From positions 1,116,001 through 1,180,000 of the forward strand of contig OZ251228.1 in NCBI GenBank assembly GCA_965240325.2: a stretch of 64,000 nucleotides of DNA, given 5' to 3'. A program made the translations under genes and the position numbers. Source of the stretch: Rebecca billardiae RCC1528 (Eukaryota > Protista > Haptophyta). Each line of letters begins with the position of its first letter. The first letter of the stretch is position 1. Below the pieces are notes generated by a model, which was given only the letters and a program-made list of their open reading frames with translations, was not told the origin of the DNA and did no database searches. Positions 33,667-55,600 of this stretch are shown one piece after another.

Positions 33667-36600
33667 CTACACCACATGCACTACCGCCGCCTCCGCCTGC
33701 ACGGCTTCCAGAACGCCCACGTCCTCTGCGAGCGCGCGCATCAGCAGGCGGAACGTCGGCAGGTCGGTCGCGTCCGCGTGCTCGGCGGCGAGCATCCCGC
33801 ACAGCGCGTCGCGCTGCGCCGCGTCCACGTGTGCGCACAGCGCCAGCGCATCGCGCGCCAGCTCGAGGGGCGCGACGCCGCCGCCCGCGCCGGCGCGCCC
33901 GTTGTCCACGACAAGAGCGTGCAGCGCGCCGATAGCCTCGTCGCGCACGCCCGCGTGCGCCGGATCGACGAGCGCGCGGAGCAGCGCGTCCGCAACCACG
34001 GGCCGCGCAGTCACGCACTCTGGATGGGCGCGCAGCCGACCGCGCGTCGCCTCGTCCGCGCGCACCAGCCGCTCCGCCGCCGAGCGAAACGCGGCGCGCG
34101 CGCCCGGCCGCGCGAGCGCGTGCGCGTACGCGCCGACGAGCGCGCGCACCGCGCCCGGCGTCGCCTCGAGCTCGCGCCAGCGCTCGCGCACGAGCACGTC
34201 GAGCACGCGATGGTACCGCGGCGCCGACGCGCGCCGGCTGGCGCCCGACTCGAGCCGCGCCGCGCACAGCTGCAGCGCGGCCGCCCAGTGCGCGCGCGAG
34301 CCGCCGACCATCGCGAGCAGCCGCAGCAGCAGGCGCTCGAGGGCGGCGCCGGCGCGCTCGCTGCCCGGCCCGCCTGCCGTGCGCACCGGCCGCGCGGCGT
34401 ACGCCACGAGCTCGTCGAGCAGCGGCGTGAGCGCACCCAGCGCGCCGCCCGCCGCGCCGCGCGCGCCTGCCGGCGCGGCCGCGAGCGCGAGCGCGAGACC
34501 TGCAAGCGCGCCGAGCGCACGCGCGCACGCCTCGCGCGCGGCGGGGTCAGTGGCGCGCTCGTCGACGCTCGCGTAGTGCCGGATCAGCGCGGCTGCGACG
34601 GGCAGCAGCGGCTCCAACGCGCCGTGCGCCGCGTCCACCGCCGCGCGCGCCAGCCCATGCGACGCGCGCACCAGCGCCGTGAGCGCGCGCGCCCCAGCCG
34701 CGACCTCGCGCGCCGCTGCCGCCTCGCCCGCGCCCGACGGCGGCGGCCACGCTCCCGGCGTGAGCGCGTCGGCGCGCGGCGTGCCCGCTGCGTCGAGCAG
34801 GCCGCACGCATGCCACTGGGCTGCCGCCACGCGCACGAGCACGCCGACCGCACCCGCGCCCCACTCCGCCGCGCCGTGCGCGCGGCCGGCGGCGTGCGCG
34901 GCCGCTCGGAGTGCGAACAAGCTCAGAGCGCCGCACATCGGCGCACGGCCACGAGCGGGCAGCGCGCGAACGAGTGCGTGCGCGTCGGCAGCGAGCGCGT
35001 GCACGGCCGAGCGCACGCTCGCGTGCGCCTCGCGCACGCCGTCTGCCGCCCACGCCTCGGCCGGCACCGCGCTCGCGAACGCGCGAACCAGGGCCGCGGC
35101 CGCGCCGCCGAGCGCGGCCGCGGCCGCCCGCCCGTCGGCCGACGCCGCATCCGCTGCTGCTGCGTGCGCCGCGCCCAGCGCGCCGACGATGAGCTGGGCG
35201 GCCTCGGCCTCGGCGGCGACGTCGGCGCGCGAGGCCTCAGCCACGTGCGCGAGCGGCCTCGCCAGCGCGGGCGCGAGCGCGCGCAGCAGCAGCAGCAGCC
35301 CAACGCGGGCGCACGCGCCATCGCGAGCTCGCGGCGGCGGCGGCAGCGGCGACAAGGCTCGCGCCGCGCTCAGCGCCGCGCGCGCGAGCTCCAAGGCGAG
35401 CTGGCGCCCTCCGCCCGCGCACGCATCGAGCGCGCCGACCGCCTGGCACGCCACCGGGCACAGCGCCGCAAGCGCGAGCAGCTCGTCCCCGCCCTCCGCC
35501 GCACCGCCCGCACCGAGCGGCGCGCACAGCTCAGCGACGCGCGCGCTCACAGCCGCCACGGCCGCATCCGGCCACAGGGCGAGCACGCCGCCCACAATGT
35601 CAGCCTCCGTGTGCGCGTCGACGAGCGCGGCCCGCGCTGCGGGCTCGGCTGCGTCATCCTCGTCGCTCTCGCCGCTGCTATCCACTGCGCCGATCGCCTC
35701 CGCCGCCGCGCCGCCGCCGCCACCGCCGTCGAGGTTGTCATCGTCATCGTCAGCGCCCTCATCCGCGGACGCTGCGGAGGCGCCGCTGTCATCGTCGGCG
35801 TCAGCGTCGGCGTCGGCAGGGCCCGGGCCCGCGGCAGCCTGCGCCCCACGCCGGCTGGGGGAGGGCCCGCGCAGCAGCCCGTCGGCCAGCACGCGCGCCG
35901 CCACGCGCCTCCGCTCGAGCACGTGCCGCAGCAGCTCCCCGTGGCCCGGACCGAAGGCGGCGCAGAATTCGTCACGGCTGAGTCCGAGCGGTCTCGCGCG
36001 CGTGCCCTCCTCGCGCACGCACGCGCCCAGCCCGTCGAGCAGCGTGGCCCACGCGCGGTAGCACGCGCGCGCGGCGGCGCGGGTGCCAGGGGCACACGTA
36101 AGCGCGAGCAGCGCGCCGAGCAGCGCGCCTGCCTCGTCGCTGTACGGCACTGTCGCTGCGCCGCCGATCCGAGGCAGCACGTGCGCACACATGGCCTGCG
36201 CGCACTCTGCGAGCGCGCGCGCCTCCGCCGTCGCTCCCTCGGCGCGACGCGCCTCGGCGGGTGACGCGGCCGCGCGGCGGAGCGCCTGCTCGAGGTGTGC
36301 CAGCGCCGGCACGAACAGGCTCGCCGCGTCCGCCGCGCGCACGTTGCGCTCGAAGAGCGTGCGCGCGCACGCGAGCGCGCGGGCGCGATGAGCCGCGCTC
36401 GGCGCTGCAAAGCGCGCGCACAGCGCTGGCACGAGCTGGGGCGGGACGGACTGCGCGCTGACGGGGAGCCACTGGGCGCACGTACTGAGCGTGTCGAGTG
36501 CGTCGGCCTCAACACCCACGCCACCGCCACCTCCGTCATCCGCCCCGGCCGCCGCCGCGAGCGCATCCGCCGCATGCGCAAACACGGCGGGCGCAGCAGC

Positions 36601-37152
36601 CGACAGGCCGCGCGCGAGCAGGCGGCGGCGCGAGCTGAGCACCGTGGCGCGAGAGGGGTCGAGGCTCTCGTGGACGAGCAGCTCAATCAGCCGAAGGCCA
36701 AGGGCGCGCGTCGGCGGTGAGCGCACCGCCGCGAGCAAGTCGTCGAGAAACGAAGGAGCGGCGTCCGGCCACAGCTGCCGGCCGGCGCGCACGTACACCT
36801 GGCATAGCTTGCGGTTGACGCCGGATGGCCAGGCGGCGGCGTGCGTGAAGAGGAGCTCGCGCAGCACCGTGAGCGTCTCGAGCTGCTCCGCGTGCGCCAG
36901 CCCGTGCCAGCGCGCCAGCACGAGCCGGTCGAGCACGAGCGCGCAGAACCACAGCACCAGTTGGCCCGCGGCGGCGGGCTCGCGCAGCGCGGCGACGGCG
37001 ACGGCGACGTTGGCCGGCTCGTCGCGAAAGCGCACGAGCTCGGTCTCAAGCTGCTGTCGCCGCGACGGGTCGGTCCCATCGCCCCCGTAGTACTGCGCCA
37101 GCGCGTGCTGAAGCTCGTGCAGCACGCGGCGGTGATCATGACCGTGCGCCAT
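33667..37152 (-). CDS. XPO6: Exportin-6-like karyopherin-beta (1161 aa, apparently intronless)
   Basis: Importin-beta N-terminal pattern; RKLCQVYVRAGRQLWP and VRSPPTRALGL...DPSR parallel XPO6 NKLCKVIVDIGRQDWP and IQSPVTTPLGL...CPRE; C-terminal DLPTF...LAED parallels DLPSF...LVND (recalled sequence). Confidence 0.8.
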   Translation of the reverse strand: MAHGHDHRRVLHELQHALAQYYGGDGTDPSRRQQLETELVRFRDEPANVAVAVAALREPAAAGQLVLWFCALVLDRLVLARWHGLAHAEQLETLTVLRELLFTHAAAWPSGVNRKLCQVYVRAGRQLWPDAAPSFLDDLLAAVRSPPTRALGLRLIELLVHESLDPSRATVLSSRRRLLARGLSAAAPAVFAHAADALAAAAGADDGGGGGVGVEADALDTLSTCAQWLPVSAQSVPPQLVPALCARFAAPSAAHRARALACARTLFERNVRAADAASLFVPALAHLEQALRRAAASPAEARRAEGATAEARALAECAQAMCAHVLPRIGGAATVPYSDEAGALLGALLALTCAPGTRAAARACYRAWATLLDGLGACVREEGTRARPLGLSRDEFCAAFGPGHGELLRHVLERRRVAARVLADGLLRGPSPSRRGAQAAAGPGPADADADADDDSGASAASADEGADDDDDNLDGGGGGGAAAEAIGAVDSSGESDEDDAAEPAARAALVDAHTEADIVGGVLALWPDAAVAAVSARVAELCAPLGAGGAAEGGDELLALAALCPVACQAVGALDACAGGGRQLALELARAALSAARALSPLPPPPRARDGACARVGLLLLLRALAPALARPLAHVAEASRADVAAEAEAAQLIVGALGAAHAAAADAASADGRAAAAALGGAAAALVRAFASAVPAEAWAADGVREAHASVRSAVHALAADAHALVRALPARGRAPMCGALSLFALRAAAHAAGRAHGAAEWGAGAVGVLVRVAAAQWHACGLLDAAGTPRADALTPGAWPPPSGAGEAAAAREVAAGARALTALVRASHGLARAAVDAAHGALEPLLPVAAALIRHYASVDERATDPAAREACARALGALAGLALALAAAPAGARGAAGGALGALTPLLDELVAYAARPVRTAGGPGSERAGAALERLLLRLLAMVGGSRAHWAAALQLCAARLESGASRRASAPRYHRVLDVLVRERWRELEATPGAVRALVGAYAHALARPGARAAFRSAAERLVRADEATRGRLRAHPECVTARPVVADALLRALVDPAHAGVRDEAIGALHALVVDNGRAGAGGGVAPLELARDALALCAHVDAAQRDALCGMLAAEHADATDLPTFRLLMRALAEDVGVLEAVQAEAAVVHVV

Positions 37153-38290: not shown

Positions 38291-38538
38291 CCAGGTGAGC
38301 ACGCCCTCGCCGCCGCCGCCGCCGGGCGGGCGTGGGCTAATAGAAAGACGTGAACGTCCCGGCCAGGACGGTCGCCGAGCGGCGGCAGCCGCCGGACTCT
38401 TCCCTTGGCCCTCCTTGCCTCCGTTCGCCAGTGTGTCGCTTGACGGCGTCGGTGTCCACTGACCAGTGGCCAGGACCCCATTTGAACCGCGCCTCCTCGG
38501 CACCGCGCCGGCTCGCGAAAGGATCGACCTCAGGAGCG

Positions 38539-41500
38539 ATGGAGGCGTGCGTGCGCACCATCGTGGGGCACACCGAGTCGGTGTACTCGGTGGCGACCTC
38601 GAGCGCGGACGGCGGCTGCCGCTGGGCCTTGTCCGCGTCTGCCGACGAGACAGTGCGGCTGTGGGATCTGCACTCGGGCGCGTGCGTGCGCATATTCAAG
38701 GGGCACACCTCCTGGGTGAACTCGGTGGCGACCTCGAGCGCGGACGGCGGCTGCCGCTGGGCCATGTCCGCGTCTGCCGACGAGACAGTGCGGCTGTGGG
38801 ACCTGCAGTCGGGTGCGTGCACGCGCACCCTCAAGGGGCACACATGGGGGGTGAACTCGGTGGCGCTCTCGAGCGCGGACGGCGGCTGCCGCTGGGCCGT
38901 GTCCGCGTCTGCCGACAAGAGTGTGCGGCTGTGGGACCTGCAGTCTGCGGGCGCATGCGTGCGCGTCTTCCAGGGGCACACCGACTGGGTGCTCTCGGTG
39001 GCGATCTCGAGCGCGGACGGCGGCTGCCGCTGGGCCGTGTCCGCGTCTGCCGACAAGAGTGTGCGGCTGTGGGACCTGCAGTCGGGCGCGTGCTCGCGCG
39101 TTTTCGAGGAGCACATCGACCAGGTGCTCTCGGTGGCGATCTCGAGCGCGGATGGCGGCTGCCGCTGGGCCGTGTCCGCGTCTGCCGACAAGAGTGTGCG
39201 GCTGTGGGACCTGCAGTCTGCGGGCGCATGCGTGCGCGTCTTCCAGGGGCACATCAACCGGGTGCTCTCGGTGGCGATCTCGAGCGCGGATGGCGGCTGC
39301 CGCTGGGCTATGTCCGCGTCTGCCGACAACACTATGCGGCTGTGGGACCTCAAGTCGGGCGCGTGTCTGAGAACCCTCGCGGGGCACACACACTGGGTGC
39401 GCTCGGTGGCGATCTCGAGCGCGGACGGCTGCTGTCGCTGCGTAGTGTCCGCGTCTGCCGACAACACCGTGCGGCTGTGGTCGCTCGCACCGCCTTCCGA
39501 GGCGCCGGGCGCAGCTGCACCGGTGGCGCTGGTAGACGAGGTGCTCGCGCCGCGCGCTGGTGACGCGCCTCCGGGCGCTATTGATGGCCAGGCCGCGCTC
39601 GAGGCTCTCGCCGAGTTGCGGGGCGCGGCGAACACTGCGCGCGCCGCGCTCGGCGCCGAGCAGGCTGCGATCCGCGCCGCCCTCGGCCGTGGCGGCGTGG
39701 ACGAGGCGCGGCTGTCGCGGCGCGATGCGCGGCGTGCCGAGCTGCGTGCCGCGCTCGAGGCGTACGTCGACGCGCTCGTGGACTCTCATCAGCGGCTGGC
39801 GGCGCTGCGTCGCGAGGCGCGCGCGTTGCGAGCGGCGCTCGAGCGCGCGGGCGCAGAGCAGCCGCACCCGCCGGCCGCCGACGGGTCCGGTCCGGCGTTC
39901 CTGCCGCCGTCTCGCGCGCTCGATCGCGCGGTGAGCGTGATGATGCGCGCGTACGACGTCACACCGCCGCCCTCCGGCGCGGGCGCGGGCGGCGCGGCGC
40001 TCGCGGCCGTGTGGGAGGTGGCGCGCCAGGCCATCGCCCTCGCGGCGCGCGGCATGTACGCTGACGCGGACGACGGCGCATGCGCCTCGGCGTGGGCGCT
40101 CGCCATGCCCTGCCTGTGCGACGCGGCACGCGATGCCGCCGGTGATGGCGGTGATGTCGTCCGCCTGTCCGATGCGGCGCGCGCGCGCGCGGACGCGTGT
40201 GACCAGATCGCCGCGACGGCCGAGCGCACGCGCGCGCTCGTGCGCGAGGCGGAGGCGGAGGCGCGCGAGATCCGCGCGCTGCCGCCCGCCGAGCGCGCGC
40301 ACGGCGCGCACGAGCTGCGCGAGCGCGAGGAGGCGTGCAAGGTTTCGTCGCGCGCGCTGCGTCTCGCGCACCGCGCTCTTGAAGATGCTCAGGACGACGG
40401 CGGCGACGTGGACGGCGCGCAGCGCGCGCTCGTCGACGCGCAGCGGCGCGCGCAGCGCACGCAGCGCGCGCGCGAGCGCTCGCTCGACCAGCTGTACGAG
40501 CTGGCGGACGGGCCGTTCCCCGAGCTGCCCGCCATGCTGCCCGGCGTGTTCGACGGCGCAGGCGCGCTGCCCGCGCGCGCGCGACCGGCGTGGCTGCACG
40601 GGCGCACGTTCGCGCAGTACGAGCCGTGCGAGTGGCCCGACGGCGCGGCGCCCGGCCGCGCGCGGCATGATGTGCTGCTGTGCGCGTTCGCAGGCGAGCG
40701 CGTCGTCCTGAAGGTGTACCGGCTGGCGAGCGACACGGAGCGCCGGCGGCTCGAGCGCGAGGTGGAGTTTGCGCTGGCGCACGCGCACCCAAACCTCGCG
40801 CGCGTGGCCGGCGTCTTCGTCGACGAGTCGCGCGGCGCGCTCGTGCAGATGCCGCTCTACTCGGGCGGCACGCTGGTCGGCTGGCTCAAGCAAGACGAGG
40901 CGGCGGGCTTGCCGCCCGAGGCGAAGCGCTTCGGCGCGCCGGGCGCGCGTATGCTCGAGCCAGCGCACGCGCGCGTCGCGCCCGTGCGCGTGCGCGCGCT
41001 GCGGCAGCTGCTGGGCGCGCTTGCGCACCTGCACGCGCGCGGCGCGGTGCACGGCGACGTGAAGCTCGAGAACGCGTTCGTGCAGCTGCCGGGCGACGAC
41101 GCGGCCAAGCGGCCGCTCGGCGCGGCCGAGCCGTTCCGCGTGCTGCTCGGCGACTTCGACCTGACGCGCGCGGAGGAGGCGCAGCACGCTGGCGGCGTGG
41201 CGAGCGCGACGACGCGCGTGGGCGCGGGCACCGAGGGCCACATGGCGCCCGAGCTGCTCCAGCCCGGCGCGCGCGCGAGTGCGGCCTCGGACGTGTTCGC
41301 GTTTGGCGTGTGCGTGCTCCGCGCGCTCGCGGCGGACGATGAGACACGCGCCGCGCTTGTGGGCTCGCTCCAGGGCGCGCGCGCCGCGGCGGCTGCGCTG
41401 GGCGAGCCGCTCGTCATGGCTGCTCTGTCGGACGCGCCGGACGCGCGGCCGAGCGCGGCGGAGCTCGAGAGCGCGGCGCTGTGGGCGGCGAGCGACGACG

Positions 41501-42330
41501 TACTGCGCGCGGCCGAGGCTGAGCACGAGGCGGCGGCCGCGACCGCGCGCGCCGCGCTGCGCACGTGCGCGGTGTGCTTGGACGAGGAGGTGCCGCCGGA
41601 CGAGTGCGCTGAGTGCGCGGGCGGCGGGCACGCGGTGTGCTCGGTCTGCCTCTCGAGTCACGTGCGCGTGTGCGCGCAGCCCGACGGCGGCGGCGGCGCG
41701 GTGCTCGACGCGGACGGGCGCGTGCCGTGCGTCGAGGCGGGCAACGGCTGCGCACACGCGTACCTGGATGGCGAGCTCGCGCGCCACACAGCCGCAGCCG
41801 CGTTCGACGAGTATTGGCGCGCACGCGAGCAGCGAGCCGAGGCGCGCGGCGAGGAGCGCGCAGCCGCGCGCGCGCACTCCGAGGTCGTTCGCCTCGCGGC
41901 GCTCGACGTGCCCGAGCGCTTGCTCGAGCAGCGGCGCGCGCACATCATCGAGGAGATCCTCACGCTCAAGTGCCCGCGCTGCGGCACGGCGTTTGCCGAG
42001 CGGCTCGACGGCGCGCGCGGCTTCGACGGCTGCTGCGCGCTGCGCTGCGCGCGCGATCGGTGCGGCTGCCACTTCTGCGCGTACTGCCTCGCCGACTGCG
42101 GCGCCGACGCGCACCCGCACGTGCTCGGCTGCGAGCACGGCAACGGCACGCCCTTTGCGCAGCGCGGGGAGTTCGAGGCGGCGCAGCGCGCGCGCCGCGA
42201 GCGCGCGCTGCGCAGCTACCTCACCGCCGAGGCGGGCCCGGATGGCGCGGCGCGCCAAGCGATCGTCGCGTCCGTCGAGCGCGAGCTGCGCGACCTGCGC
42301 ATCGATCCCGACGCACTCGCGCGCGCGTGA
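38539..42330 (+). CDS. WD40 propeller (7 repeats) - helical/coiled region - protein kinase - RING1 and RING2/Rcat-like zinc fingers (RBR-like E3)
   Basis: ATG at 38539 (MEACVRTIVGH); seven GH...WD/WS repeats; VLK, HGDVKLEN, DFD, APE, DVFAFG; CAVC...C...H..C..C...C.....C RING; KCPRC...DGCCALRC....C..HFCAYC...H RING2-like. Confidence 0.9.
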   Translation: MEACVRTIVGHTESVYSVATSSADGGCRWALSASADETVRLWDLHSGACVRIFKGHTSWVNSVATSSADGGCRWAMSASADETVRLWDLQSGACTRTLKGHTWGVNSVALSSADGGCRWAVSASADKSVRLWDLQSAGACVRVFQGHTDWVLSVAISSADGGCRWAVSASADKSVRLWDLQSGACSRVFEEHIDQVLSVAISSADGGCRWAVSASADKSVRLWDLQSAGACVRVFQGHINRVLSVAISSADGGCRWAMSASADNTMRLWDLKSGACLRTLAGHTHWVRSVAISSADGCCRCVVSASADNTVRLWSLAPPSEAPGAAAPVALVDEVLAPRAGDAPPGAIDGQAALEALAELRGAANTARAALGAEQAAIRAALGRGGVDEARLSRRDARRAELRAALEAYVDALVDSHQRLAALRREARALRAALERAGAEQPHPPAADGSGPAFLPPSRALDRAVSVMMRAYDVTPPPSGAGAGGAALAAVWEVARQAIALAARGMYADADDGACASAWALAMPCLCDAARDAAGDGGDVVRLSDAARARADACDQIAATAERTRALVREAEAEAREIRALPPAERAHGAHELREREEACKVSSRALRLAHRALEDAQDDGGDVDGAQRALVDAQRRAQRTQRARERSLDQLYELADGPFPELPAMLPGVFDGAGALPARARPAWLHGRTFAQYEPCEWPDGAAPGRARHDVLLCAFAGERVVLKVYRLASDTERRRLEREVEFALAHAHPNLARVAGVFVDESRGALVQMPLYSGGTLVGWLKQDEAAGLPPEAKRFGAPGARMLEPAHARVAPVRVRALRQLLGALAHLHARGAVHGDVKLENAFVQLPGDDAAKRPLGAAEPFRVLLGDFDLTRAEEAQHAGGVASATTRVGAGTEGHMAPELLQPGARASAASDVFAFGVCVLRALAADDETRAALVGSLQGARAAAAALGEPLVMAALSDAPDARPSAAELESAALWAASDDVLRAAEAEHEAAAATARAALRTCAVCLDEEVPPDECAECAGGGHAVCSVCLSSHVRVCAQPDGGGGAVLDADGRVPCVEAGNGCAHAYLDGELARHTAAAAFDEYWRAREQRAEARGEERAAARAHSEVVRLAALDVPERLLEQRRAHIIEEILTLKCPRCGTAFAERLDGARGFDGCCALRCARDRCGCHFCAYCLADCGADAHPHVLGCEHGNGTPFAQRGEFEAAQRARRERALRSYLTAEAGPDGAARQAIVASVERELRDLRIDPDALARA

Positions 42331-45673: not shown

Positions 45674-46327
45674 TCAGCGGCCTGTGACAAATGGCACAGA
45701 GAGGTCGCCTAGCTGAAGGCATCCACGCTCCAGGTCAATCACAGCCCTGTATTTCCGCATCATGTCGAGACCGAGGAGAAGCTCTGGGCCATGCCGCTGG
45801 TCCAGGACGGTGAGCGTGAGCGAGACGCGGGCGTTTGAGCCGCCAAGCTGCAGTTCAGCCAGGTGCACGCGTCCCACAATGTGTGCCGTGCCAACACCCG
45901 CAGCCACTCCGCGGAACTTGGTGTCGATCAGACGCGATAGACCGCATCGCTCGGCACATGCACGCGTGATGACGGTCATCTGCGCCCCAGTATCCACAAA
46001 TGCGCGAAGCCTCTCGCCGTTCAGCGTGCACTGCACATACAGCATCTCCACAGGGACGAATGCCTCGGGATTCGCCTCGATGGCGAGAGCGCGATTCTCG
46101 CGGATCACCTCACGCCCCGCGTCGGGGGCACGACCGACCAGCGATGCGGAAGGGTGCCGCGCGCGGTGGATTTCTTGCGCCTGCAGTGCGCGCGCGAGCT
46201 GCTCATCCACGTCTCCGGAACGTCTACCCGAAGCCATCTGCGAACGGCAGCCGCGCGGTGCTCCCGGAGCGGTTTGCCCAGAGACGGGTCCAGACGCGCC
46301 TCGGCCGCTCGCTCCAGAGCTATCCAT
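45674..46327 (-). CDS. DDI1-like retroviral-type aspartyl protease with UIM-like motif, no UBL/UBA seen
   Basis: PEAFVPVEMLYV, AFVDTGAQMTVIT..CAERCGL.RLIDTKFRGVAAGVG, LLGLDM are the DDI1 RVP signature; DEQLARALQAQE is UIM-like. Start uncertain. Confidence 0.88.
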   Translation of the reverse strand: MDSSGASGRGASGPVSGQTAPGAPRGCRSQMASGRRSGDVDEQLARALQAQEIHRARHPSASLVGRAPDAGREVIRENRALAIEANPEAFVPVEMLYVQCTLNGERLRAFVDTGAQMTVITRACAERCGLSRLIDTKFRGVAAGVGTAHIVGRVHLAELQLGGSNARVSLTLTVLDQRHGPELLLGLDMMRKYRAVIDLERGCLQLGDLSVPFVTGR

Positions 46328-46476
46328 ACCTCTTCCTTGATCAGCGGGAAATCGACGCCGGCCAAAGCGAACACCCAACGGCGCGCGGCCTTCCCCAAGC
46401 TGGCGGTGGGAGCTGTTGTGTGGCGGGTGTGCGTGCGCGGGCGGCATTATTTTCCCAAGCGGCGGCCGCGGCCGCC

Positions 46477-47658
46477 ATGTGTGGGCGCGCGTGCATGGCG
46501 CTCCCCGCGGACAGCGTCGCGCGCACGTCGCGCACGTCACGTTGGGTCGATCGCGAGGCCTACACCCCGTCCACCAACGTGTGCCCTGGCCGACGCTTGC
46601 CGGTCGTGTACCGTGCCGACGGCGGCGGCCGCACACTGCACACGATGGCATTCGGCCTCGTGCCCTCATATCAGAAGGCAGAGGAGAAGCCCGACTTCTT
46701 CCGGATGATGAACGCACGGAGCGAGACGGCCGCGTCCAAGCCCGCCTTCCGCCGCTTGGTGAGCGCCCGGCGCTGCGCTGTCCCCATTCAGGGCTTTTAC
46801 GAGTGGCGGCAGGAGCAGGATGGCCGCCGCCAGCCATTCTTCGTGACGCCCGCGCGGACGGCGGAGGGCCAAACCACGGGCGTGAAGCGCGAGTCGGACT
46901 CAGATGCACGGCACGACGACCCGGTGCTTTGGCTCGCGGCTTTGTACGACGAGTGGGCACGCCCCGACGCCGAGCAGCGCCTCTACTCCTTCACGATTCT
47001 GACGACAGAAGCCGCGCTAGACCTGGCCTGGCTGCACGAGCGCATGCCGGCCGTCCTCGCCACTGACGCCGCGGTCGAGCGCTGGCTGGACGTGGGACGC
47101 GTGCCGGCGGCGATTGCGCTCCAGGACTGCGTGCCGTGCGACGGCCTCAGGTGGCACCCCGTGCACCCGCGCGTGGGTAAAGTCTCCTATCAGGGCGCAG
47201 ACGCGTGCGCACGCTACGAGCCCATCCGCATCACTGCCTTCTTCGGCAAAGGACGGGCAGCGGGCGCTGGCTGGGAGGACGTGGCGCGGGAGGCAGCCTC
47301 ATCGGCTTGCGCGCCGGCCGCCGACGGCTCGGGCGCGCGCGAAGCGGACGCCATGGCTATGCTGGCTGCCACGCCACATGGCACTGCGCTGTGTGCTCAG
47401 CCCGTTTCCAACGCGCCATCGCCGTCGGCCGCTCACACACCAGCCATCAGCACCAAGCGGCAGGCCGCAGCTGGGCCGCAGGCTGACGCGCAAAGCGACG
47501 AGCGCGTGGGCCGTCGGCCGCGCTTGGCATCGCCCGTCACCAAGGGGAACGCCAAGGCCAACAAGCAGGATGCCAGCACACCAAGGAAGCAGCCAACTCA
47601 GAATAATGTCGCACCCATCACGCGCTTCTTTGCACCTGGCGGGAGCGGGGGGTGCTAG
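46477..47658 (+). CDS. HMCES: SRAP-domain abasic-site processing protein (HMCES/YedK family), 393 aa
   Basis: N-terminal MCGR (catalytic Cys2), FGLVP, NARSET, GFYEW, SFTILT, HERMP; two PIP-like motifs (ITAFF, ITRFF). Confidence 0.95.
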   Translation: MCGRACMALPADSVARTSRTSRWVDREAYTPSTNVCPGRRLPVVYRADGGGRTLHTMAFGLVPSYQKAEEKPDFFRMMNARSETAASKPAFRRLVSARRCAVPIQGFYEWRQEQDGRRQPFFVTPARTAEGQTTGVKRESDSDARHDDPVLWLAALYDEWARPDAEQRLYSFTILTTEAALDLAWLHERMPAVLATDAAVERWLDVGRVPAAIALQDCVPCDGLRWHPVHPRVGKVSYQGADACARYEPIRITAFFGKGRAAGAGWEDVAREAASSACAPAADGSGAREADAMAMLAATPHGTALCAQPVSNAPSPSAAHTPAISTKRQAAAGPQADAQSDERVGRRPRLASPVTKGNAKANKQDASTPRKQPTQNNVAPITRFFAPGGSGGC

Positions 47659-49408: not shown

Positions 49409-50879
49409 CGACGCGGCGCTCGGGGGACGTCGGCTCGGCTGGTGAGGAGCTCCTGATGGTCCCCGGCGGCGGCGCGACCCGACGGAAATACTGTATCCAA
49501 AAATCCGGTCACCGACCACCCTTGGTCACCCCAAGGCTTTCGGGGCGATGGCCGACGCGACGGGAGTGGTGGTACCGGGGACAAGAAGGGGTTCGGCGGA
49601 GGGGGCAGCGTTCCTATTGTCGGGGACAATCTCAGACTGGGGGTTCGATCTCGACGAGGGGGTTCAACCCGGTCGGGGTTCGAGGGGTTCAAAGTCCGGA
49701 AGAGTCCGAATAACCAGGTGGCGTAGTGATTTTGAATCGACGACTGCGGTTTGGAGTTTGAATTCAGCCGAGAACAGAGCGCCCGCGACGGCCCCACCCC
49801 TCGGTCGGCGACCTCCGCACGCGCGCGCGGCGCCCCCAACCGCCGCCGGCGCTCGCCCTCGCCTGCCTCCGCCCGTCGGTGCGGCACGCCGCCAAGCTGA
49901 GCACGCCGCGCCCTCCGATACACGTCATGCGGGCCTGCCCTTCTTCCTGCCCTTCTCCTGCTCTTCCTGCTGGCACGCCGACGGTTCCGACGGCGACGCG
50001 TGTCCAGCACAACCGCACGCGGCAGTGCTCGGCGCGCACATCCCAAGGCGCGTCGACCGCTTCTTTCTGCATGGCAGTCTACTTGCCATCTGCATCATCC
50101 TCGCCTCGGCTGAGCGCGCCCCGCCGACGGGCGGCGCCGTGGCTCGGCGCGCCGCGCCGCGCCGCGCCGCGCCGCGCCGCGCCGCGCCGAGCAGCTCGGC
50201 TTGCCGCCGGGCGGCGGTGCCGGGCTCGGCGGAGAGCGGGCGTCGGCGGAGATCGGTGTGCACGACCTGAAGTGCATCGGCTCGTTCTTTCTGCGCGGCC
50301 GCGCAGCCACTACCGTCATCGGACTCGACTTGGTCAAGCGCGCCGCGCGCGCGCAAGCGGCTTTGCGTCTGTGATCGCACGCGCAGCACTACCGCTGTGG
50401 CAGACTCGGCGGCGTCGGAGGCGATCGATCGGCGTGCTCCGCCGGCGGTGCATCGCCCGCATCTTTCGGCGCCCCGCTCCTCTCGGCGCGGCGCAGTACT
50501 CGCCCCCGGCTGCCGACTCGGCCCAGCACGCCGCGCGCACGGCCGGCGCCGCACCGCGGCGCGCCGTGCCGCGCGGCCAAGCTTGCGCGCCGCATGGCTA
50601 CGGTGACGGACTCAGCGGCGAGCGGGCTTCTACGGCGGTGGCGACGATCGGCGTGCCTGGCTAGCCGGATGTCGTCCGCCTCTCTCGGCGCGGCCGGCGC
50701 GGCGCAGTGCTCGGCGCCGACCTCCGACTCGGCGCGGCGCGCGGCCGCGGCCGTGCAGCGCGCCTCGACGTGCGCGGCCGCGCGGCCGAGGTCGCACGCC
50801 GCACGGCGGCCGTGACGGCCTCGTTCGAGAGCGGGCGTCGACCGCGTGGGCGGAGCTCGGTGCGCACGAGCTGAGCCTC

Positions 50880-51950
50880 CCGACCACGTCGCGCTGCGTG
50901 GCGCCGTGCTCGGCACCGGCACCGGACTCGGCGCGGCGCGCGCGGCCGGCGGCGCGCTGCCGGCCACGCGCTGCGCGCCTCAGCGGCGCGCCGTGCTGTG
51001 CGGCCGAGCGCGCGCGCCGCACGGCTACGGTGACGACGGGCTCGGCGGTGGGCGGGCATCGGCGGCGTTGGCGGAGCTCGGCGCGCACGAACGGAGGCGC
51101 ATCGACCACGTCGCGCTGCGTGGCGCCTTGCTCGACACCGGCCTCGGACTCGGCGCGGCGCGCGCGGCCGGCGGCGCGCCGCGCGCCTCAGCGCCGCGCG
51201 CCGCGCCGTGCTGTGCGGCCGAGCGCGCGCGCCGCACGGCTACGGTGACGACGGGCTCGGCGGAGAGCGGGCGGCGGCGGCGTTGGCGGAGCTCGGTGCG
51301 CACGAACGGAGGCACATCGACCACGTCGCGCTGCGTGACGCCGCGCTCGGCACCGTCCTCGGACTCGGCGCGGCGCGCGCGGCCGGCGGCGCGCCGCGCG
51401 CCTCAGCGCCGCGCGGCGCGCCGTGCTGTGCGGCCGAGCGCGCGCGCCGCACGGCTACGGTGACGACGGGCTCGGCGGAGAGCGCGTGTCGGCGGCGTTG
51501 GCGGAGCTCGGCGCGCACGAACGGAGGCGCATCGACCACGTCGCGCTGCGTGACGCCGCGCTCGGCACCGGCCTCGGACTCGGCGCGGCGCGCGCGGCCG
51601 GCGGCGCGCCGCGCGCCTCAGCGCCGCGCGGCGCGCCGTGCTGTGCAGCCGAGCGCGCGCGCCGCACGGCTACGGTGACGACGGGCTCGGCGGAGAGCGC
51701 GTGTCGGCGGCGTTGGCGGAGCTCGGCGCGCACGAACGGAGGCGCATCGACCACGTCGCGCTGCGTGACGCCGCGCTCGGCACCGTCCTCGGACTCGGCG
51801 CGGCGCGCGCGGCCGGCGGCGCGCCGCGCGCCTCAGCGCCGCGCGGCGCGCCGTGCTGTGCAGCCGAGCGCGCGCGCCGCACGGCTACGGTGACGACGGG
51901 CTCGGCGGAGAGCGGGCTGCGGCGGCGTGGGCAGAGCTCGGCGCGCGTGA
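50880..51950. repeat. 215-bp tandem repeat (~5 copies) inside the 3,163-bp element (also 54043-55113)
   Basis: CGACCACGTCGCGCTGCGTG at 50881, 51103, 51318, 51533, 51748. Confidence 0.93.
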
Positions 51951-52312
51951 ACTGAGGTGCATCGATCCGCTCTCCCCGTGCCACCACGCTTCCCGAACGC
52001 AGGTGCGCGCGAGAGCACCACCCTGCCGTGCCGTGTGTGCGCGCCGTGTGCACCGCGTGTTTGTGTCCTGTGCTGCCGTGCAGGTGGGCGCAGGCAGGTG
52101 CTCTCCATCTACATGGCGCAGGGGCGCAAGTGGCAGTCGTGCAGCACGCCCTCTCTACCTGCAGACGCTGCAACCTACTCGGCGCGCAACGACGATCCTG
52201 CCCATACGTACTCCAGACTTGAGCATGGTGCGAGCACGCTCGCGCAGCGCAGCGCACCAACCATCCGCCGCGTTTGCGCGGCAGCATGCGCACTGTCTTC
52301 TCTCTGACATGT

Positions 52313-52686
52313 GCCCTCCTTCCCTCTCCTCTCCCTCTCCCCTCCCTCTCCCTTCCCTCCCTTCCCTCCCTCTCCCCTCCCTCTCCCCTCCCTCTCCCCT
52401 CCCTCTCCCCTCCTCTCCCCTCCCTCTCCCCTCCCTCTCCCCTCCTCTCCCCTCCCTCTCCCCTCCCTCTCCCTCTCCCCTCCCTCTCCCCTCCCTCTCC
52501 CTCTCCCCTCCCTCTCCCCTCCCTCTCCCCTCCTCTCCCCTCCCTCTCCCCTCCCTCTCCCCTCCTCTCCCCTCTCCCCTCCTCTCCCCTCCCTCTCCCT
52601 CCCTCTCCCCTCCTCTCTCCTCCTTCTCCCCTCCTCCTCCTCCTTCTCCCCCCTCTCTCCCCCTTCTCTCCCCCTTCTCCCCCTCT
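52313..52686. repeat. ~370-bp pure polypyrimidine tract (also 55476-55849)
   Basis: Only C and T, in CCCTCTCCCCT-type units. Confidence 0.96.
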
Positions 52687-55600
52687 GACGCCATCCTTAT
52701 CCCCGCAAATTAGCCTAAACCCAAAATATTTGCCGTACCGGGGACAAGAAGGGGTTCGGCGGAGGGGGCAGCGTTCCTATTGTCGGGGACAATCTCAGAC
52801 TGGGGGTTCGATCTCGACGAGGGGGTTCAACCCGGTCGGGGTTCGAGGGGTTCAAAGTCCGGAAGAGTCCGAATAACCAGGTGGCGTAGTGATTTTGAAT
52901 CGACGACTGCGGTTTGGAGTTTGAATTCAGCCGAGAACAGAGCGCCCGCGACGGCCCCACCCCTCGGTCGGCGACCTCCGCACGCGCGCGCGGCGCCCCC
53001 AACCGCCGCCGGCGCTCGCCCTCGCCTGCCTCCGCCCGTCGGTGCGGCACGCCGCCAAGCTGAGCACGCCGCGCCCTCCGATACACGTCATGCGGGCCTG
53101 CCCTTCTTCCTGCCCTTCTCCTGCTCTTCCTGCTGGCACGCCGACGGTTCCGACGGCGACGCGTGTCCAGCACAACCGCACGCGGCAGTGCTCGGCGCGC
53201 ACATCCCAAGGCGCGTCGACCGCTTCTTTCTGCATGGCAGTCTACTTGCCATCTGCATCATCCTCGCCTCGGCTGAGCGCGCCCCGCCGACGGGCGGCGC
53301 CGTGGCTCGGCGCGCCGCGCCGCGCCGCGCCGCGCCGCGCCGCGCCGCGCCGAGCAGCTCGGCTTGCCGCCGGGCGGCGGTGCCGGGCTCGGCGGAGAGC
53401 GGGCGTCGGCGGAGATCGGTGTGCACGACCTGAAGTGCATCGGCTCGTTCTTTCTGCGCGGCCGCGCAGCCACTACCGTCATCGGACTCGACTTGGTCAA
53501 GCGCGCCGCGCGCGCGCAAGCGGCTTTGCGTCTGTGATCGCACGCGCAGCACTACCGCTGTGGCAGACTCGGCGGCGTCGGAGGCGATCGATCGGCGTGC
53601 TCCGCCGGCGGTGCATCGCCCGCATCTTTCGGCGCCCCGCTCCTCTCGGCGCGGCGCAGTACTCGCCCCCGGCTGCCGACTCGGCCCAGCACGCCGCGCG
53701 CACGGCCGGCGCCGCACCGCGGCGCGCCGTGCCGCGCGGCCAAGCTTGCGCGCCGCATGGCTACGGTGACGGACTCAGCGGCGAGCGGGCTTCTACGGCG
53801 GTGGCGACGATCGGCGTGCCTGGCTAGCCGGATGTCGTCCGCCTCTCTCGGCGCGGCCGGCGCGGCGCAGTGCTCGGCGCCGACCTCCGACTCGGCGCGG
53901 CGCGCGGCCGCGGCCGTGCAGCGCGCCTCGACGTGCGCGGCCGCGCGGCCGAGGTCGCACGCCGCACGGCGGCCGTGACGGCCTCGTTCGAGAGCGGGCG
54001 TCGACCGCGTGGGCGGAGCTCGGTGCGCACGAGCTGAGCCTCCCGACCACGTCGCGCTGCGTGGCGCCGTGCTCGGCACCGGCACCGGACTCGGCGCGGC
54101 GCGCGCGGCCGGCGGCGCGCTGCCGGCCACGCGCTGCGCGCCTCAGCGGCGCGCCGTGCTGTGCGGCCGAGCGCGCGCGCCGCACGGCTACGGTGACGAC
54201 GGGCTCGGCGGTGGGCGGGCATCGGCGGCGTTGGCGGAGCTCGGCGCGCACGAACGGAGGCGCATCGACCACGTCGCGCTGCGTGGCGCCTTGCTCGACA
54301 CCGGCCTCGGACTCGGCGCGGCGCGCGCGGCCGGCGGCGCGCCGCGCGCCTCAGCGCCGCGCGCCGCGCCGTGCTGTGCGGCCGAGCGCGCGCGCCGCAC
54401 GGCTACGGTGACGACGGGCTCGGCGGAGAGCGGGCGGCGGCGGCGTTGGCGGAGCTCGGTGCGCACGAACGGAGGCACATCGACCACGTCGCGCTGCGTG
54501 ACGCCGCGCTCGGCACCGTCCTCGGACTCGGCGCGGCGCGCGCGGCCGGCGGCGCGCCGCGCGCCTCAGCGCCGCGCGGCGCGCCGTGCTGTGCGGCCGA
54601 GCGCGCGCGCCGCACGGCTACGGTGACGACGGGCTCGGCGGAGAGCGCGTGTCGGCGGCGTTGGCGGAGCTCGGCGCGCACGAACGGAGGCGCATCGACC
54701 ACGTCGCGCTGCGTGACGCCGCGCTCGGCACCGGCCTCGGACTCGGCGCGGCGCGCGCGGCCGGCGGCGCGCCGCGCGCCTCAGCGCCGCGCGGCGCGCC
54801 GTGCTGTGCAGCCGAGCGCGCGCGCCGCACGGCTACGGTGACGACGGGCTCGGCGGAGAGCGCGTGTCGGCGGCGTTGGCGGAGCTCGGCGCGCACGAAC
54901 GGAGGCGCATCGACCACGTCGCGCTGCGTGACGCCGCGCTCGGCACCGTCCTCGGACTCGGCGCGGCGCGCGCGGCCGGCGGCGCGCCGCGCGCCTCAGC
55001 GCCGCGCGGCGCGCCGTGCTGTGCAGCCGAGCGCGCGCGCCGCACGGCTACGGTGACGACGGGCTCGGCGGAGAGCGGGCTGCGGCGGCGTGGGCAGAGC
55101 TCGGCGCGCGTGAACTGAGGTGCATCGATCCGCTCTCCCCGTGCCACCACGCTTCCCGAACGCAGGTGCGCGCGAGAGCACCACCCTGCCGTGCCGTGTG
55201 TGCGCGCCGTGTGCACCGCGTGTTTGTGTCCTGTGCTGCCGTGCAGGTGGGCGCAGGCAGGTGCTCTCCATCTACATGGCGCAGGGGCGCAAGTGGCAGT
55301 CGTGCAGCACGCCCTCTCTACCTGCAGACGCTGCAACCTACTCGGCGCGCAACGACGATCCTGCCCATACGTACTCCAGACTTGAGCATGGTGCGAGCAC
55401 GCTCGCGCAGCGCAGCGCACCAACCATCCGCCGCGTTTGCGCGGCAGCATGCGCACTGTCTTCTCTCTGACATGTGCCCTCCTTCCCTCTCCTCTCCCTC
55501 TCCCCTCCCTCTCCCTTCCCTCCCTTCCCTCCCTCTCCCCTCCCTCTCCCCTCCCTCTCCCCTCCCTCTCCCCTCCTCTCCCCTCCCTCTCCCCTCCCTC

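What the first reader, a model, noticed from the sequence alone, without database searches (positions are those of the whole stretch)
38539..42330. Single-chain sensor-kinase-ubiquitin ligase: WD40 + helical region + atypical kinase + RING1/Rcat
Seen: one intronless ORF joins a variable WD40 propeller, a long helical region, a kinase with intact Lys/HGD/APE but DFD for DFG and no canonical Gly loop, and two zinc fingers resembling RBR RING1 and catalytic RING2 (DGC...H) without an obvious middle IBR. No NACHT/NB-ARC domain. Inference: an NLR-independent innate-immune or allorecognition receptor coupling recognition to phosphorylation and ubiquitination. I know of no described protein with this architecture; best candidate for a new system in this window.
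Basis: partly seen in the sequence, partly recalled or inferred. Interest (0 to 1): 0.8.

Follow-up and report, generated by a model that had tools for sequence, protein, structure and literature searches.

The report
WD40–kinase–ubiquitin ligase fusion gene
A very GC-rich alga has one uninterrupted gene joining a seven-bladed WD40 propeller, a long helical region, a protein kinase and a parkin/RNF216-like ubiquitin ligase that lacks its usual middle zinc finger; the ligase part belongs to a large protist family that I found neither modelled in Pfam nor described in the papers searched.

Summary
Window 38539-42330 (+) is one 1,263-codon ORF with GC3 of about 0.9 throughout. It encodes four parts.

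- **WD40 repeats:** seven near-identical copies.
- **Helical region:** about 370 residues, with no family match.
- **Kinase:** it keeps Lys, HGD, Asn, DFD and APE but has no Gly-rich loop.
- **C-terminal module:** 274 residues.

The module's profile hits parkin best in the PDB (E 3.6e-7). Its model (pLDDT 93.8) matches RNF216 RING1 plus helix (Z 10.6) and RNF216 Rcat plus helix (Z 6.2). No IBR lies between the two fingers, only helices. The Cys at the Rcat catalytic position is invariant in 61 of 61 relatives.

The module is not unique. An exhaustive search gave 1,789 clusters, always with the module C-terminal, among them haptophyte, dinoflagellate and oomycete proteins. Of 40 long members, 18 carry kinases and 14 carry SF1 helicases. 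Pfam has no model for it, and seven paper searches found no description.

A metagenome contig carries the same WD40-to-ligase order in one ORF. Notes from this scan report the same kinase-ligase core on other DNA of this genome, joined to LRR, FG-repeat and WD40 parts.

The enzymatic reading is well supported. The immune-receptor reading is plausible but untested. No RNA run was listed.

The parts
38539..42330 (+). Whole coding sequence, 1,263 codons plus stop. It is a single ORF that needs no intron.
   Evidence: GC3 is 0.91 overall and 0.88-0.93 in each segment. It is colinear with the 1,305-aa ORF of L002.
38539..39495 (+). Seven WD40 repeats of 45-46 aa each (residues 1-319), enough for one 7-bladed propeller. 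Repeats share 73-92% nt identity and vary mainly at unit positions 3, 7, 11, 12 and 14, around the GH dipeptide.
   Evidence: Pfam WD40 E 1e-46, 7 stretches. TRF period 135, 6.9 copies, 86% matches. Per-column analysis.
39496..40608 (+). Ala/Arg-rich helical region (residues 320-690). No family match.
   Evidence: No Pfam hit at E up to 10. AF2 predicts long helices at model residues 30-64, 70-121, 219-261, 265-301 and 305-338, with pLDDT 83-96 in those stretches. Its fold was not searched on its own.
40510..40530 (+). GPFPELP motif (residues 658-664). Its Pro-Glu is invariant in 19 kinase-bearing relatives, about 60 residues before the kinase Lys.
   Evidence: Alignment A4, invariant P342 and E343. 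Position.
40588..41505 (+). Protein kinase domain (about residues 684-989): K725, HGD 838-840, K842, N845, DFD 872-874, APE 903-905. There is no Gly-rich loop. An insert of about 30 aa is shared with the closest relatives.
   Evidence: Pfam Pkinase E 4.7e-17. Catalytic residues invariant or at least 90% conserved in 19 family members. Fold Z 20-22 to PERK, Csk, IRAK4, IRAK1 and RIPK kinases. Nearest PDB sequences are 9gmp, IRE1 and RIPK1/3.
41566..41751 (+). RBR-type RING1 (C3HC4). Ligands are C1010, C1013, C1026, H1031, C1034, C1037, C1064 and C1071.
   Evidence: All eight ligand columns are invariant or at least 97% conserved in 61 sequences. The profile aligns to parkin RING1, domain E 6e-6. 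VIA-align gives RNF216 RING1 plus helix Z 10.6, rmsd 2.7 over 90 aa; RNF144A RING1 Z 7.9; parkin Z 7-7.7.
41767..41961 (+). Cys-free helical linker (module residues 88-152) where canonical RBR ligases have the IBR (BRcat) zinc finger.
   Evidence: Helices 88-94, 97-132 and 135-152 at pLDDT above 90. No conserved Cys or His lies between C82 and C156 of the module.
41965..42132 (+). Rcat (RING2)-like zinc domain. Pattern: CPRC, then the invariant 'GC' Cys1165 (codon 42031-42033), then C-x4-C-x4-C-x2-C-x8-H-x-H-x3-C.
   Evidence: Cys at module position 176 is 61 of 61 conserved and is surplus to the Rcat-type zinc ligand pattern. It aligns to the parkin RING2 'GGC'. Also matched are ARIH1 RING2 (E 0.004), CUL9 and ARIH2. 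Fold: RNF216 Rcat plus helix Z 6.2, parkin Rcat Z 4.8.
42163..42327 (+). Conserved C-terminal helices after the Rcat-like domain (module residues 220-273), including a nearly invariant RR pair.
   Evidence: Helices 220-243, 247-256, 258-263 and 268-273. R230 and R231 are at least 90% conserved. The region is covered by the alignment to the RNF216 Rcat-helix chains 7m4o and 7m4n.

Best explanation
This is most likely a real single-exon gene for a four-part enzyme.

1. A 7-bladed WD40 propeller binds a protein or ligand on its top face. This is inferred.
2. A long helical region, with a conserved FPE motif just before the kinase, links and perhaps pairs the chains. This is inferred.
3. A non-RD (HGD) protein kinase with a full set of catalytic residues phosphorylates the bound target, itself or the ligase module. 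The residues are shown; the activity is inferred.
4. A C-terminal RING1, helical hairpin, Rcat and helix module works like an RBR ligase. RING1 docks an E2 loaded with ubiquitin, ubiquitin passes to the invariant Cys1165, and from there to a substrate. The fold and the conservation are shown; the chemistry is inferred.

The module is closest to RNF216 but has no IBR. It is a portable C-terminal cassette of a large protist family, attached elsewhere to kinases alone, to SF1 (ZNFX1-like) helicases, and to ubiquitin-like, ankyrin or CCCH domains. This gene is the WD40-bearing form of the kinase-ligase branch. The biological role is open: fast-evolving recognition or defence, or regulated substrate turnover.
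For: - **One frame:** a single frame with uniform GC3 runs across all the domains.
- **Pfam:** WD40 and Pkinase are found.
- **Kinase residues:** K, HxD, K, N, D(FD), T and PE are conserved across 19 relatives at 23-50% identity. The kinase fold scores Z 22.
- **Ligase module, sequence:** the profile's best PDB hit is parkin, at E 3.6e-7. RING1 and RING2 both align, and ARIH1, ARIH2, CUL9, HOIL-1 and RNF144 also match.
- **Ligase module, fold:** the model has pLDDT 93.8. All 50 listed Foldseek hits are RBR ligases. RNF216 scores Z 10.6 and Z 6.2.
- **Catalytic position:** the Cys there is invariant in 61 of 61.
- **Family size:** 1,789 clusters at E up to 1e-3 and 979 at E up to 1e-10.
- **Partner domains:** Pkinase in 18 of 40 long members and AAA_11/AAA_12 in 14 of 40.
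- **Same order elsewhere:** a colinear 1,305-aa ORF on L002.
- **Transcripts in relatives:** kinase and module are joined in P0016, a complete MMETSP transcript ORF.
- **Precedent:** phosphorylation is a known way to switch on RBR ligases. PINK1 activates parkin, and RNF216 is most active as pSer719 (PMC9834252).
Against: - No transcript, protein or activity data exist for this gene. No RNA run was listed.
- The IBR, one of the three domains that define RBR ligases, is absent. In parkin, phospho-ubiquitin activates the ligase by binding the RING1-IBR interface (PMC9834252).
- The residue two places after the putative catalytic Cys is Ala, not the His of the Cys-His-Glu triad.
- The kinase has no Gly-rich loop and has DFD for DFG, so it could have unusual or weak nucleotide binding.
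- The helical region has only moderate model confidence in places, and its fold was not searched alone.
- The sequence match of the second finger to Rcat domains is weak on its own, with domain E values of 0.004-0.03.
Confidence: 0.6

Rival explanations
1. The protein is an intracellular immune or allorecognition receptor. The hypervariable WD40 face senses a non-self or modified-self molecule, and the kinase and ligase are the output, with no NLR-type NTPase.
For: - The WD40 units are 73-92% identical at nt level, yet differ at unit positions 3, 7, 11, 12 and 14. At those columns dN is 0.97 against dS 0.11. From general knowledge of WD40 structure, these positions lie on the top, ligand-binding face, as in fungal HET-E/NWD repeats.
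- Identity between units is higher within a protein (0.74 and 0.69) than between the window protein and L002 (0.59), which suggests homogenisation.
- The nearest solved kinases include RIPK1/3 and plant receptor-like kinases.
- The module also sits on ZNFX1-like helicases.
- Unchecked scan notes describe tandem LRR-kinase-RBR genes in this genome that vary at ligand-facing residues.
Against: - The variable columns were chosen because they vary, so the dN/dS contrast is partly circular.
- There are no population or allele data and no induction data.
- The gene is solitary here, among exportin-like, DDI1-like and SRAP genes.
- No relative turned up in viral contigs with the one pattern tried.
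- Kinase similarity to RIPK and IRAK is at the level of the general fold.
Confidence: 0.25
2. The protein is a regulatory substrate-receptor ligase of the COP1/SPA kind in one chain. The WD40 propeller recruits a fixed set of cellular substrates. The helical region dimerises the protein. The kinase primes or gates ubiquitination. The role would be ordinary signalling or turnover, not defence.
For: - From general knowledge, the domain set of RING-type ligase, coiled coil, WD40 and kinase-like domain is the one shared out between plant COP1 and SPA proteins. Arabidopsis KEG joins a RING to a kinase.
- The gene is solitary among housekeeping-type genes.
- The architecture is kept in a second organism at about 45-48% identity in the kinase and ligase parts.
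- Most kinase-ligase relatives have only the helical region in front, with no sensor-like repeat domain.
Against: - Near-identical repeats with a few strongly diverging positions are unusual for conserved substrate receptors.
- The WD40 form is rare in the family. Apart from a WD40 fragment at the N-terminus of P0001, whose cluster includes the L002 gene product P0013, none of the 169 proteins fetched matched the WD40 part.
- The scan notes of expanded, variable paralogues argue against a fixed housekeeping role.
Confidence: 0.3
3. The ligase module is not a thioester-forming enzyme. The second zinc domain is a structural, IBR-like (BRcat) finger, and the protein acts as a plain RING E3, or only binds ubiquitin or an E2.
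For: - IBR and RING2 share a fold. The profile also aligns weakly to the parkin IBR.
- There is no His two residues after the Cys.
- The sequence matches to Rcat domains are weak.
Against: - Before the C-x2-C pair, the domain has five conserved Cys, as in Rcat, against four in the parkin IBR.
- The extra one, Cys1165, is invariant in 61 of 61 and aligns to the parkin 'GGC'.
- The best matches to this part are Rcat domains of RNF216, parkin, ARIH1, ARIH2 and CUL9.
- The triad His is not kept in all active RBR ligases. HOIL-1 has Trp there (PMC9834252).
Confidence: 0.15
4. The long ORF is not one expressed gene. It is spliced into something else, split into two transcripts, or a silent recent fusion. 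Long ORFs are common in DNA this GC-rich.
For: - An antisense ORF of 1,364 codons covers the same stretch, which shows how easily long ORFs arise here.
- No RNA run was listed.
- The exact protein is not in the 15-billion-protein collection.
Against: - All four segments show the coding pattern of GC3 about 0.9 and GC2 about 0.58 in the same frame.
- Every domain is intact, with conserved catalytic and zinc residues.
- The same order occurs in one ORF on L002.
- Kinase and module are joined in a complete transcript ORF of a relative.
Confidence: 0.07

Closest known systems
RNF216 (TRIAD3), a human RBR ubiquitin ligase
   Same: It gives the best structural match to both halves of the module. RING1 plus the following helix scores Z 10.6 (8eb0). 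Rcat plus the C-terminal helix scores Z 6.2 (7m4o, 7m4n). ESM Atlas neighbours are RNF216-like clusters. RNF216 is more active when phosphorylated at Ser719 (PMC9834252).
   Different: RNF216 has an IBR between the fingers. It has no kinase or WD40, and its kinase acts in trans. Sequence identity is only 16-22%.
Parkin with PINK1 (an RBR ligase switched on by a kinase)
   Same: Parkin is the best PDB sequence hit of the module profile, at E 3.6e-7. RING1 and RING2 both align, including the catalytic 'GC'. The logic of a kinase activating an RBR ligase is the same (PMC9834252).
   Different: These are two separate proteins. Parkin has Ubl, RING0 and an IBR, and a Cys-His-Glu triad. Here the His position is Ala, the IBR is missing, and the kinase is on the same chain.
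Plant COP1/SPA complex and Arabidopsis KEG (from my own knowledge, not tested here)
   Same: The parts list is the same. COP1 has RING, coiled coil and WD40; SPA has a kinase-like domain, coiled coil and WD40. KEG has a RING and a kinase in one chain.
   Different: Those use plain RING domains without a catalytic Cys. The domain order differs, and no sequence relationship was tested.
Fungal HET-E/NWD-type WD40 repeat proteins (STAND/NLR-like receptors; from my own knowledge)
   Same: They have highly similar tandem WD40 units, with variation concentrated at a few positions next to GH.
   Different: Those carry a NACHT NTPase and a HET or other death effector. Here Pfam finds no NACHT or NB-ARC, and the outputs are a kinase and a ligase.
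ZNFX1-like SF1 helicases
   Same: Of 40 long holders of the module, 14 are AAA_11/AAA_12 helicases. P0012 also has many Cys-rich repeats. The plan is a sensor enzyme with a C-terminal ubiquitin ligase finger.
   Different: Human ZNFX1 ends in an RZ finger (my own knowledge), not this RING1-Rcat module. The window protein has a kinase in place of the helicase.

Membership tests
RBR (RING-between-RING) E3 ligases | RING1: a C3HC4 zinc finger with RBR-type fold that docks the E2 | tested here: met
   Eight ligand columns are conserved. The profile aligns to parkin RING1, E 6e-6. Fold: RNF216 Z 10.6, RNF144A Z 7.9, parkin Z 7-7.7. E2 binding itself was not tested.
RBR (RING-between-RING) E3 ligases | IBR (BRcat) zinc finger between RING1 and RING2 | tested here: not met
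   Module residues 83-155 hold no conserved Cys or His and are predicted as helices at pLDDT above 90.
RBR (RING-between-RING) E3 ligases | RING2 (Rcat) finger with a catalytic Cys that is not a zinc ligand | tested here: met
   The domain has Rcat-type Cys spacing with one surplus, invariant Cys (61 of 61), which aligns to the parkin 'GGC'. Fold: RNF216 Rcat Z 6.2, parkin Rcat Z 4.8. Thioester formation cannot be tested with these tools.
RBR (RING-between-RING) E3 ligases | [quoted passage not shown] | tested here: not met
   The position two after the Cys is Ala in 59 of 61. Conserved H203 and H205 lie further on, and their role is unknown. HOIL-1 also lacks this His (PMC9834252).
Eukaryotic protein kinases (active) | Kinase fold with VAIK Lys, HxD, catalytic Asn, DFG Asp and APE | tested here: met
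   K725, H838/D840, N845, D872 and P904-E905 are invariant or at least 90% conserved in the family. Fold Z 20-22.
Eukaryotic protein kinases (active) | Gly-rich (GxGxxG) nucleotide loop, and Gly of DFG | tested here: not met
   No Gly-rich loop in any of the 19 relatives. DFD or DFE stands in place of DFG.
WD40 beta-propeller | Seven or so WD40 repeats matching the Pfam model | tested here: met
   PF00400 E 1e-46, 7 stretches. Several propeller models match.
NLR/STAND receptors (including fungal NWD/HET-E) | Central NACHT or NB-ARC NTPase domain | tested here: not met
   No such Pfam or NCBIfam hit in the whole protein or in the helical piece at E up to 10.
NLR/STAND receptors (including fungal NWD/HET-E) | Highly similar tandem repeats with hypervariable ligand-facing positions | tested here: inconclusive
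   The pattern is present within this one gene. But the columns were chosen by their variability, and no alleles or paralogues could be compared here.

The most novel reading that the evidence does not exclude
The RING1, helical hairpin, Rcat and helix cassette is a distinct, ancient class of thioester-forming ubiquitin ligase: an IBR-less RBR. Protists use it as the common output of interchangeable intracellular sensors, with WD40, LRR or FG repeats attached through a kinase, and RNA helicases of the ZNFX1 type attached directly. That would be an NLR-independent innate immune architecture in which recognition is coupled to phosphorylation-gated ubiquitination on a single chain.
Probability: 0.2. 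Interest if true: 0.85.

Novelty: new variant of a known kind. Interest (0 to 1): 0.66.

Why it matters
RBR ligases are defined by three zinc domains, and their known allosteric control by ubiquitin uses the RING1-IBR interface. A family of well over a thousand sequence clusters keeps RING1 and an Rcat-like finger with an invariant Cys, but replaces the IBR with a helical hairpin.

If active, this family would show that the IBR is dispensable for the RING/HECT-hybrid mechanism. It would also give a compact, high-confidence module for structural and enzymatic work.

The kinase on the same chain turns the PINK1-parkin and ERK-RNF216 logic into a testable one-protein system. The fusions to WD40 here, and to helicases and reportedly LRRs elsewhere, suggest a modular sensor-effector toolkit in ecologically important algae whose immunity is largely unknown.

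Tried and rejected
- **RNA evidence.** The look-up of sequencing runs listed no run.
- **Exact-sequence look-up.** The protein is not in the collection.
- **Pfam and NCBIfam on the helical region and the C-terminus.** The only hit was a sub-threshold zf-C3HC4, E 6e-4. The weak NCBIfam MADS6 kinase hit (E 9e-11, far below its cut-off) was taken as generic kinase similarity.
- **phmmer of the helical region and the WD40 region against the fetched proteins.** Nothing was found.
- **Fold search of the helical-plus-kinase model.** The kinase filled the list, so the helical part remains unassigned.
- **ESM Atlas feature search of the helical region.** The service was busy.
- **Viral contigs.** No relative with the single pattern used.
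- **Scan of bacterial and archaeal genomes.** Absence from prokaryotes is therefore not shown.
- **tblastn of the four parts against the window.** No second copy.
- **Seven paper searches.** These covered RBR or Rcat with kinase, haptophyte, ZNFX1, 'without IBR' and the PDB code 9GMP. None described this family. The library lacks most subscription-journal papers, so this is not proof of novelty.
- **Rejected: a bacterial PkwA-type WD40 kinase.** The domain order is reversed, the relatives are eukaryotic and the neighbours are eukaryotic-type genes.

Full report
**1. What is in the sequence**

The + strand is open from 38350 to 42330. The first ATG is at 38539 and gives 1,263 codons.

This DNA has 73-77% G+C, so long ORFs arise by chance. 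An antisense ORF of 1,364 codons overlaps the same stretch. ORF length alone therefore proves nothing.

Two things show that the + frame is coding. Each of the four segments has the same codon pattern, with GC3 of 0.88-0.93 and GC2 of 0.53-0.60. Recognisable domains with intact key residues all fall in this one frame.

**2. The four parts**

*WD40 propeller.* Residues 1-319 are seven WD40 repeats (Pfam PF00400, E 1e-46, seven stretches). At DNA level they form a 135-nt tandem array of 6.9 copies with 86% matches.

*Helical region.* Residues 320-690 match no Pfam family, even at E up to 10. They are predicted as a series of long helices. A Pro-Glu within a GPFPELP motif at 658-664 is invariant in 19 relatives.

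*Kinase.* Residues of about 684-989 are a protein kinase (Pfam E 4.7e-17; fold Z 20-22 against PERK, Csk, IRAK4, IRAK1 and RIPK kinases). K725, H838-G-D840, K842, N845, D872-F-D874 and A903-P-E905 are present, and there is no Gly-rich loop. These features are family-wide. In 19 relatives at 23-50% identity, the Lys, HxD, Lys, Asn and Pro (of APE) are invariant, and the DFD Asp and the APE Glu are at least 90% conserved. That argues for an active but atypical kinase rather than a decayed one. The nearest solved sequences are 9gmp (a 'MAP kinase kinase-like' protein), IRE1, RIPK1/3 and plant receptor-like kinases.

*C-terminal module.* Residues 990-1263 are treated next.

**3. The C-terminal module**

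Pfam gives only a sub-threshold zf-C3HC4 hit. An exhaustive phmmer search with these 274 residues found 1,789 clusters (representatives at 50% identity) at E up to 1e-3, and 979 at E up to 1e-10. In the hits listed, the module lies at or near the C-terminus, in proteins of 113 to 3,225 aa.

An alignment of 61 modules (A1) shows two groups of conserved residues:
- Eight invariant or nearly invariant C3HC4 ligands.
- A second cluster with the pattern CPRC, x10-16, G-C, x4, C, x2-4, C, x4, C-x2-C, x8, H-x-H, x3, C.

No conserved Cys or His lies between the two clusters.

The profile's best PDB hit is parkin, at E 3.6e-7. Positions 12-104 align to parkin RING1 (domain E 6e-6). Positions 145-186 align to parkin RING2, 'GC' on 'GGC'. 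ARIH1 RING2, CUL9, ARIH2, HOIL-1 and RNF144A also appear in the list.

The AlphaFold model built on A1 is confident (pLDDT 93.8, pTM 0.75). All 50 listed Foldseek PDB hits are RBR ligases. VIA-align gives these scores:

| Target | Z | Model residues |
|---|---|---|
| RNF216 RING1 plus helix (rmsd 2.7 over 90 aa) | 10.6 | 18-119 |
| RNF144A RING1 | 7.9 | 12-118 |
| parkin RING1 | 7-7.7 | about 16-117 |
| RNF216 Rcat plus C-terminal helix | 6.2 | 132-269 |
| parkin Rcat | 4.8 | 128-218 |

ESM Atlas neighbours are unnamed haptophyte clusters and RNF216-like clusters.

Where an IBR would sit, the model has helices 97-132 and 135-152. The second finger has five conserved Cys before the C-x2-C pair, as in Rcat. 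The surplus one, Cys1165 of the protein, is invariant in 61 of 61 and sits at the catalytic position.

Two caveats apply:
- The residue two places after the Cys is Ala, not the triad His. That His is not universal, and HOIL-1 has Trp there (PMC9834252).
- Thioester chemistry is inferred, not shown.

**4. The family and its architectures**

A word-indexed search with residues 690-1263 found proteins with kinase plus module over 87-98% of the query. These include P0001 (45% identity) and a protein of Pavlovales sp. CCMP2436 (P0002). It also found an 1,844-aa SF1 helicase with Cys-rich repeats and the same module (P0012).

Forty long holders of the module were scanned against Pfam:

| Domain | Members out of 40 |
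|---|---|
| Pkinase | 18 |
| AAA_12 (11 of them also AAA_11) | 14 |
| ubiquitin-like | 4 |
| ankyrin | 2 |
| CCCH, DEAD helicase, NPHP3_N | 1 each |

Named sources include Pythium oligandrum (an oomycete), Polykrikos kofoidii (a dinoflagellate transcript) and MMETSP transcripts. P0016 is a complete transcript ORF with the kinase at 86-391 and the module at 398-667. The kinase-ligase fusion is therefore transcribed as one unit in a relative.

The WD40 form is rare. None of the fetched proteins matched the WD40 part by phmmer. P0001 does start with a WD40 fragment. The metagenome contig L002, which encodes its cluster-mate P0013, holds a 1,305-aa uninterrupted ORF with WD40 repeats, helical region, kinase and module in the same order.

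**5. The WD40 repeats**

The seven units share 73-92% nt identity. Amino-acid variation is concentrated at unit positions 3, 7, 11, 12 and 14, which flank the GH dipeptide, and at 43. At those columns dN is 0.97 and dS is 0.11. In the remaining columns dN is 0.11 and dS is 0.19. The columns were picked by their variability, so this contrast is only suggestive.

Identity between units is higher within each protein (0.74 in the window, 0.69 in L002) than between the two proteins (0.59). This is consistent with homogenisation within each gene.

From general knowledge of WD40 structure, the residues just before and after GH lie on the top face, where ligands bind.

**6. Context**

The gene is solitary in the window. 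tblastn with its four parts finds no second copy.

- To its left is an exportin-like ORF (Xpo1 domain).
- To its right are DDI1-like aspartyl protease, SRAP and DUF1517 ORFs.
- A 12,950-bp tandem array occupies 1-35688 and ends 2.85 kb from the gene.

Earlier notes of this scan, which are AI notes and unchecked by me, say the same genome carries the kinase-ligase core on other DNA. They report LRR-kinase-RBR tandem families, an FG-repeat version and two more WD40 versions. The Gly/Phe-rich N-terminus of the Pavlovales homologue P0002 fits the FG-repeat version.

**7. Mechanism**

*Shown:*
- The domain set and its order.
- Conservation of the kinase catalytic residues.
- The RBR-type RING1 fold.
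- The Rcat-like finger with an invariant surplus Cys.
- Absence of an IBR.

*Inferred:*
- The propeller binds a target.
- The helical region transmits the signal or oligomerises the protein.
- The kinase phosphorylates the target, itself or the ligase module.
- RING1 docks an E2 loaded with ubiquitin, and ubiquitin passes through Cys1165 to a substrate.

Phosphorylation control of RBR ligases has precedent. PINK1 activates parkin, and RNF216 is most active as pSer719 (PMC9834252).

The biological role is open. My odds are about 0.25 for a fast-evolving recognition or defence role and about 0.3 for a regulatory substrate-receptor ligase of the COP1/SPA type. The rest is undecided.

**8. Novelty**

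The components are known kinds. What appears undescribed is an RBR-type module without an IBR, its scale, and its fusion to kinases and helicases:
- Pfam has no model for it.
- Its named members are 'hypothetical'.
- Seven paper searches found nothing.

The paper library is incomplete, so I rate this a new variant of a known kind. The scan has already met this family elsewhere in this genome.

Noticed in passing
window 1-35688: A tandem array of a 12,950-bp unit, 2.76 copies at 99.6-99.8% identity. Each full unit carries a Pkinase-containing ORF (11950-13335 and 24900-26288). The right end of the array, at 35688, lies inside the exportin-like ORF 33670-37152 (-), whose Xpo1 hit (about 36409-36819) is outside the array.
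   Followed up: partly
window 49572-55898: An exact (100%) head-to-tail dimer of a 3,164-bp element, which itself contains tandem repeats of about 213 bp at 79-87% identity. A 433-bp stretch at 55898-56330 recurs exactly at 59688-60120.
   Followed up: partly
window 45677-47655: A DDI1-like aspartyl protease ORF (45677-46960, -) and an SRAP/HMCES-like ORF (46000-47655, +) overlap on opposite strands over about 960 bp. The true gene models probably have introns or different ends.
   Followed up: no
P0012 (1,844 aa, JGI) and P0050 (Pythium oligandrum TMW58426.1): SF1 helicases (AAA_11/AAA_12) carry the same RING1-Rcat module at their C-terminus. P0012 also has many NFX1-like Cys-rich repeats. 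This is a helicase-sensor counterpart of the kinase fusion.
   Followed up: partly
L002 1116-5033 and 5112-7781: The metagenome contig with the WD40-helical-kinase-ligase ORF has a dynein C-terminal gene fragment next to it on the opposite strand. Its neighbours differ from those in the window, so the two loci are not evidently syntenic.
   Followed up: no
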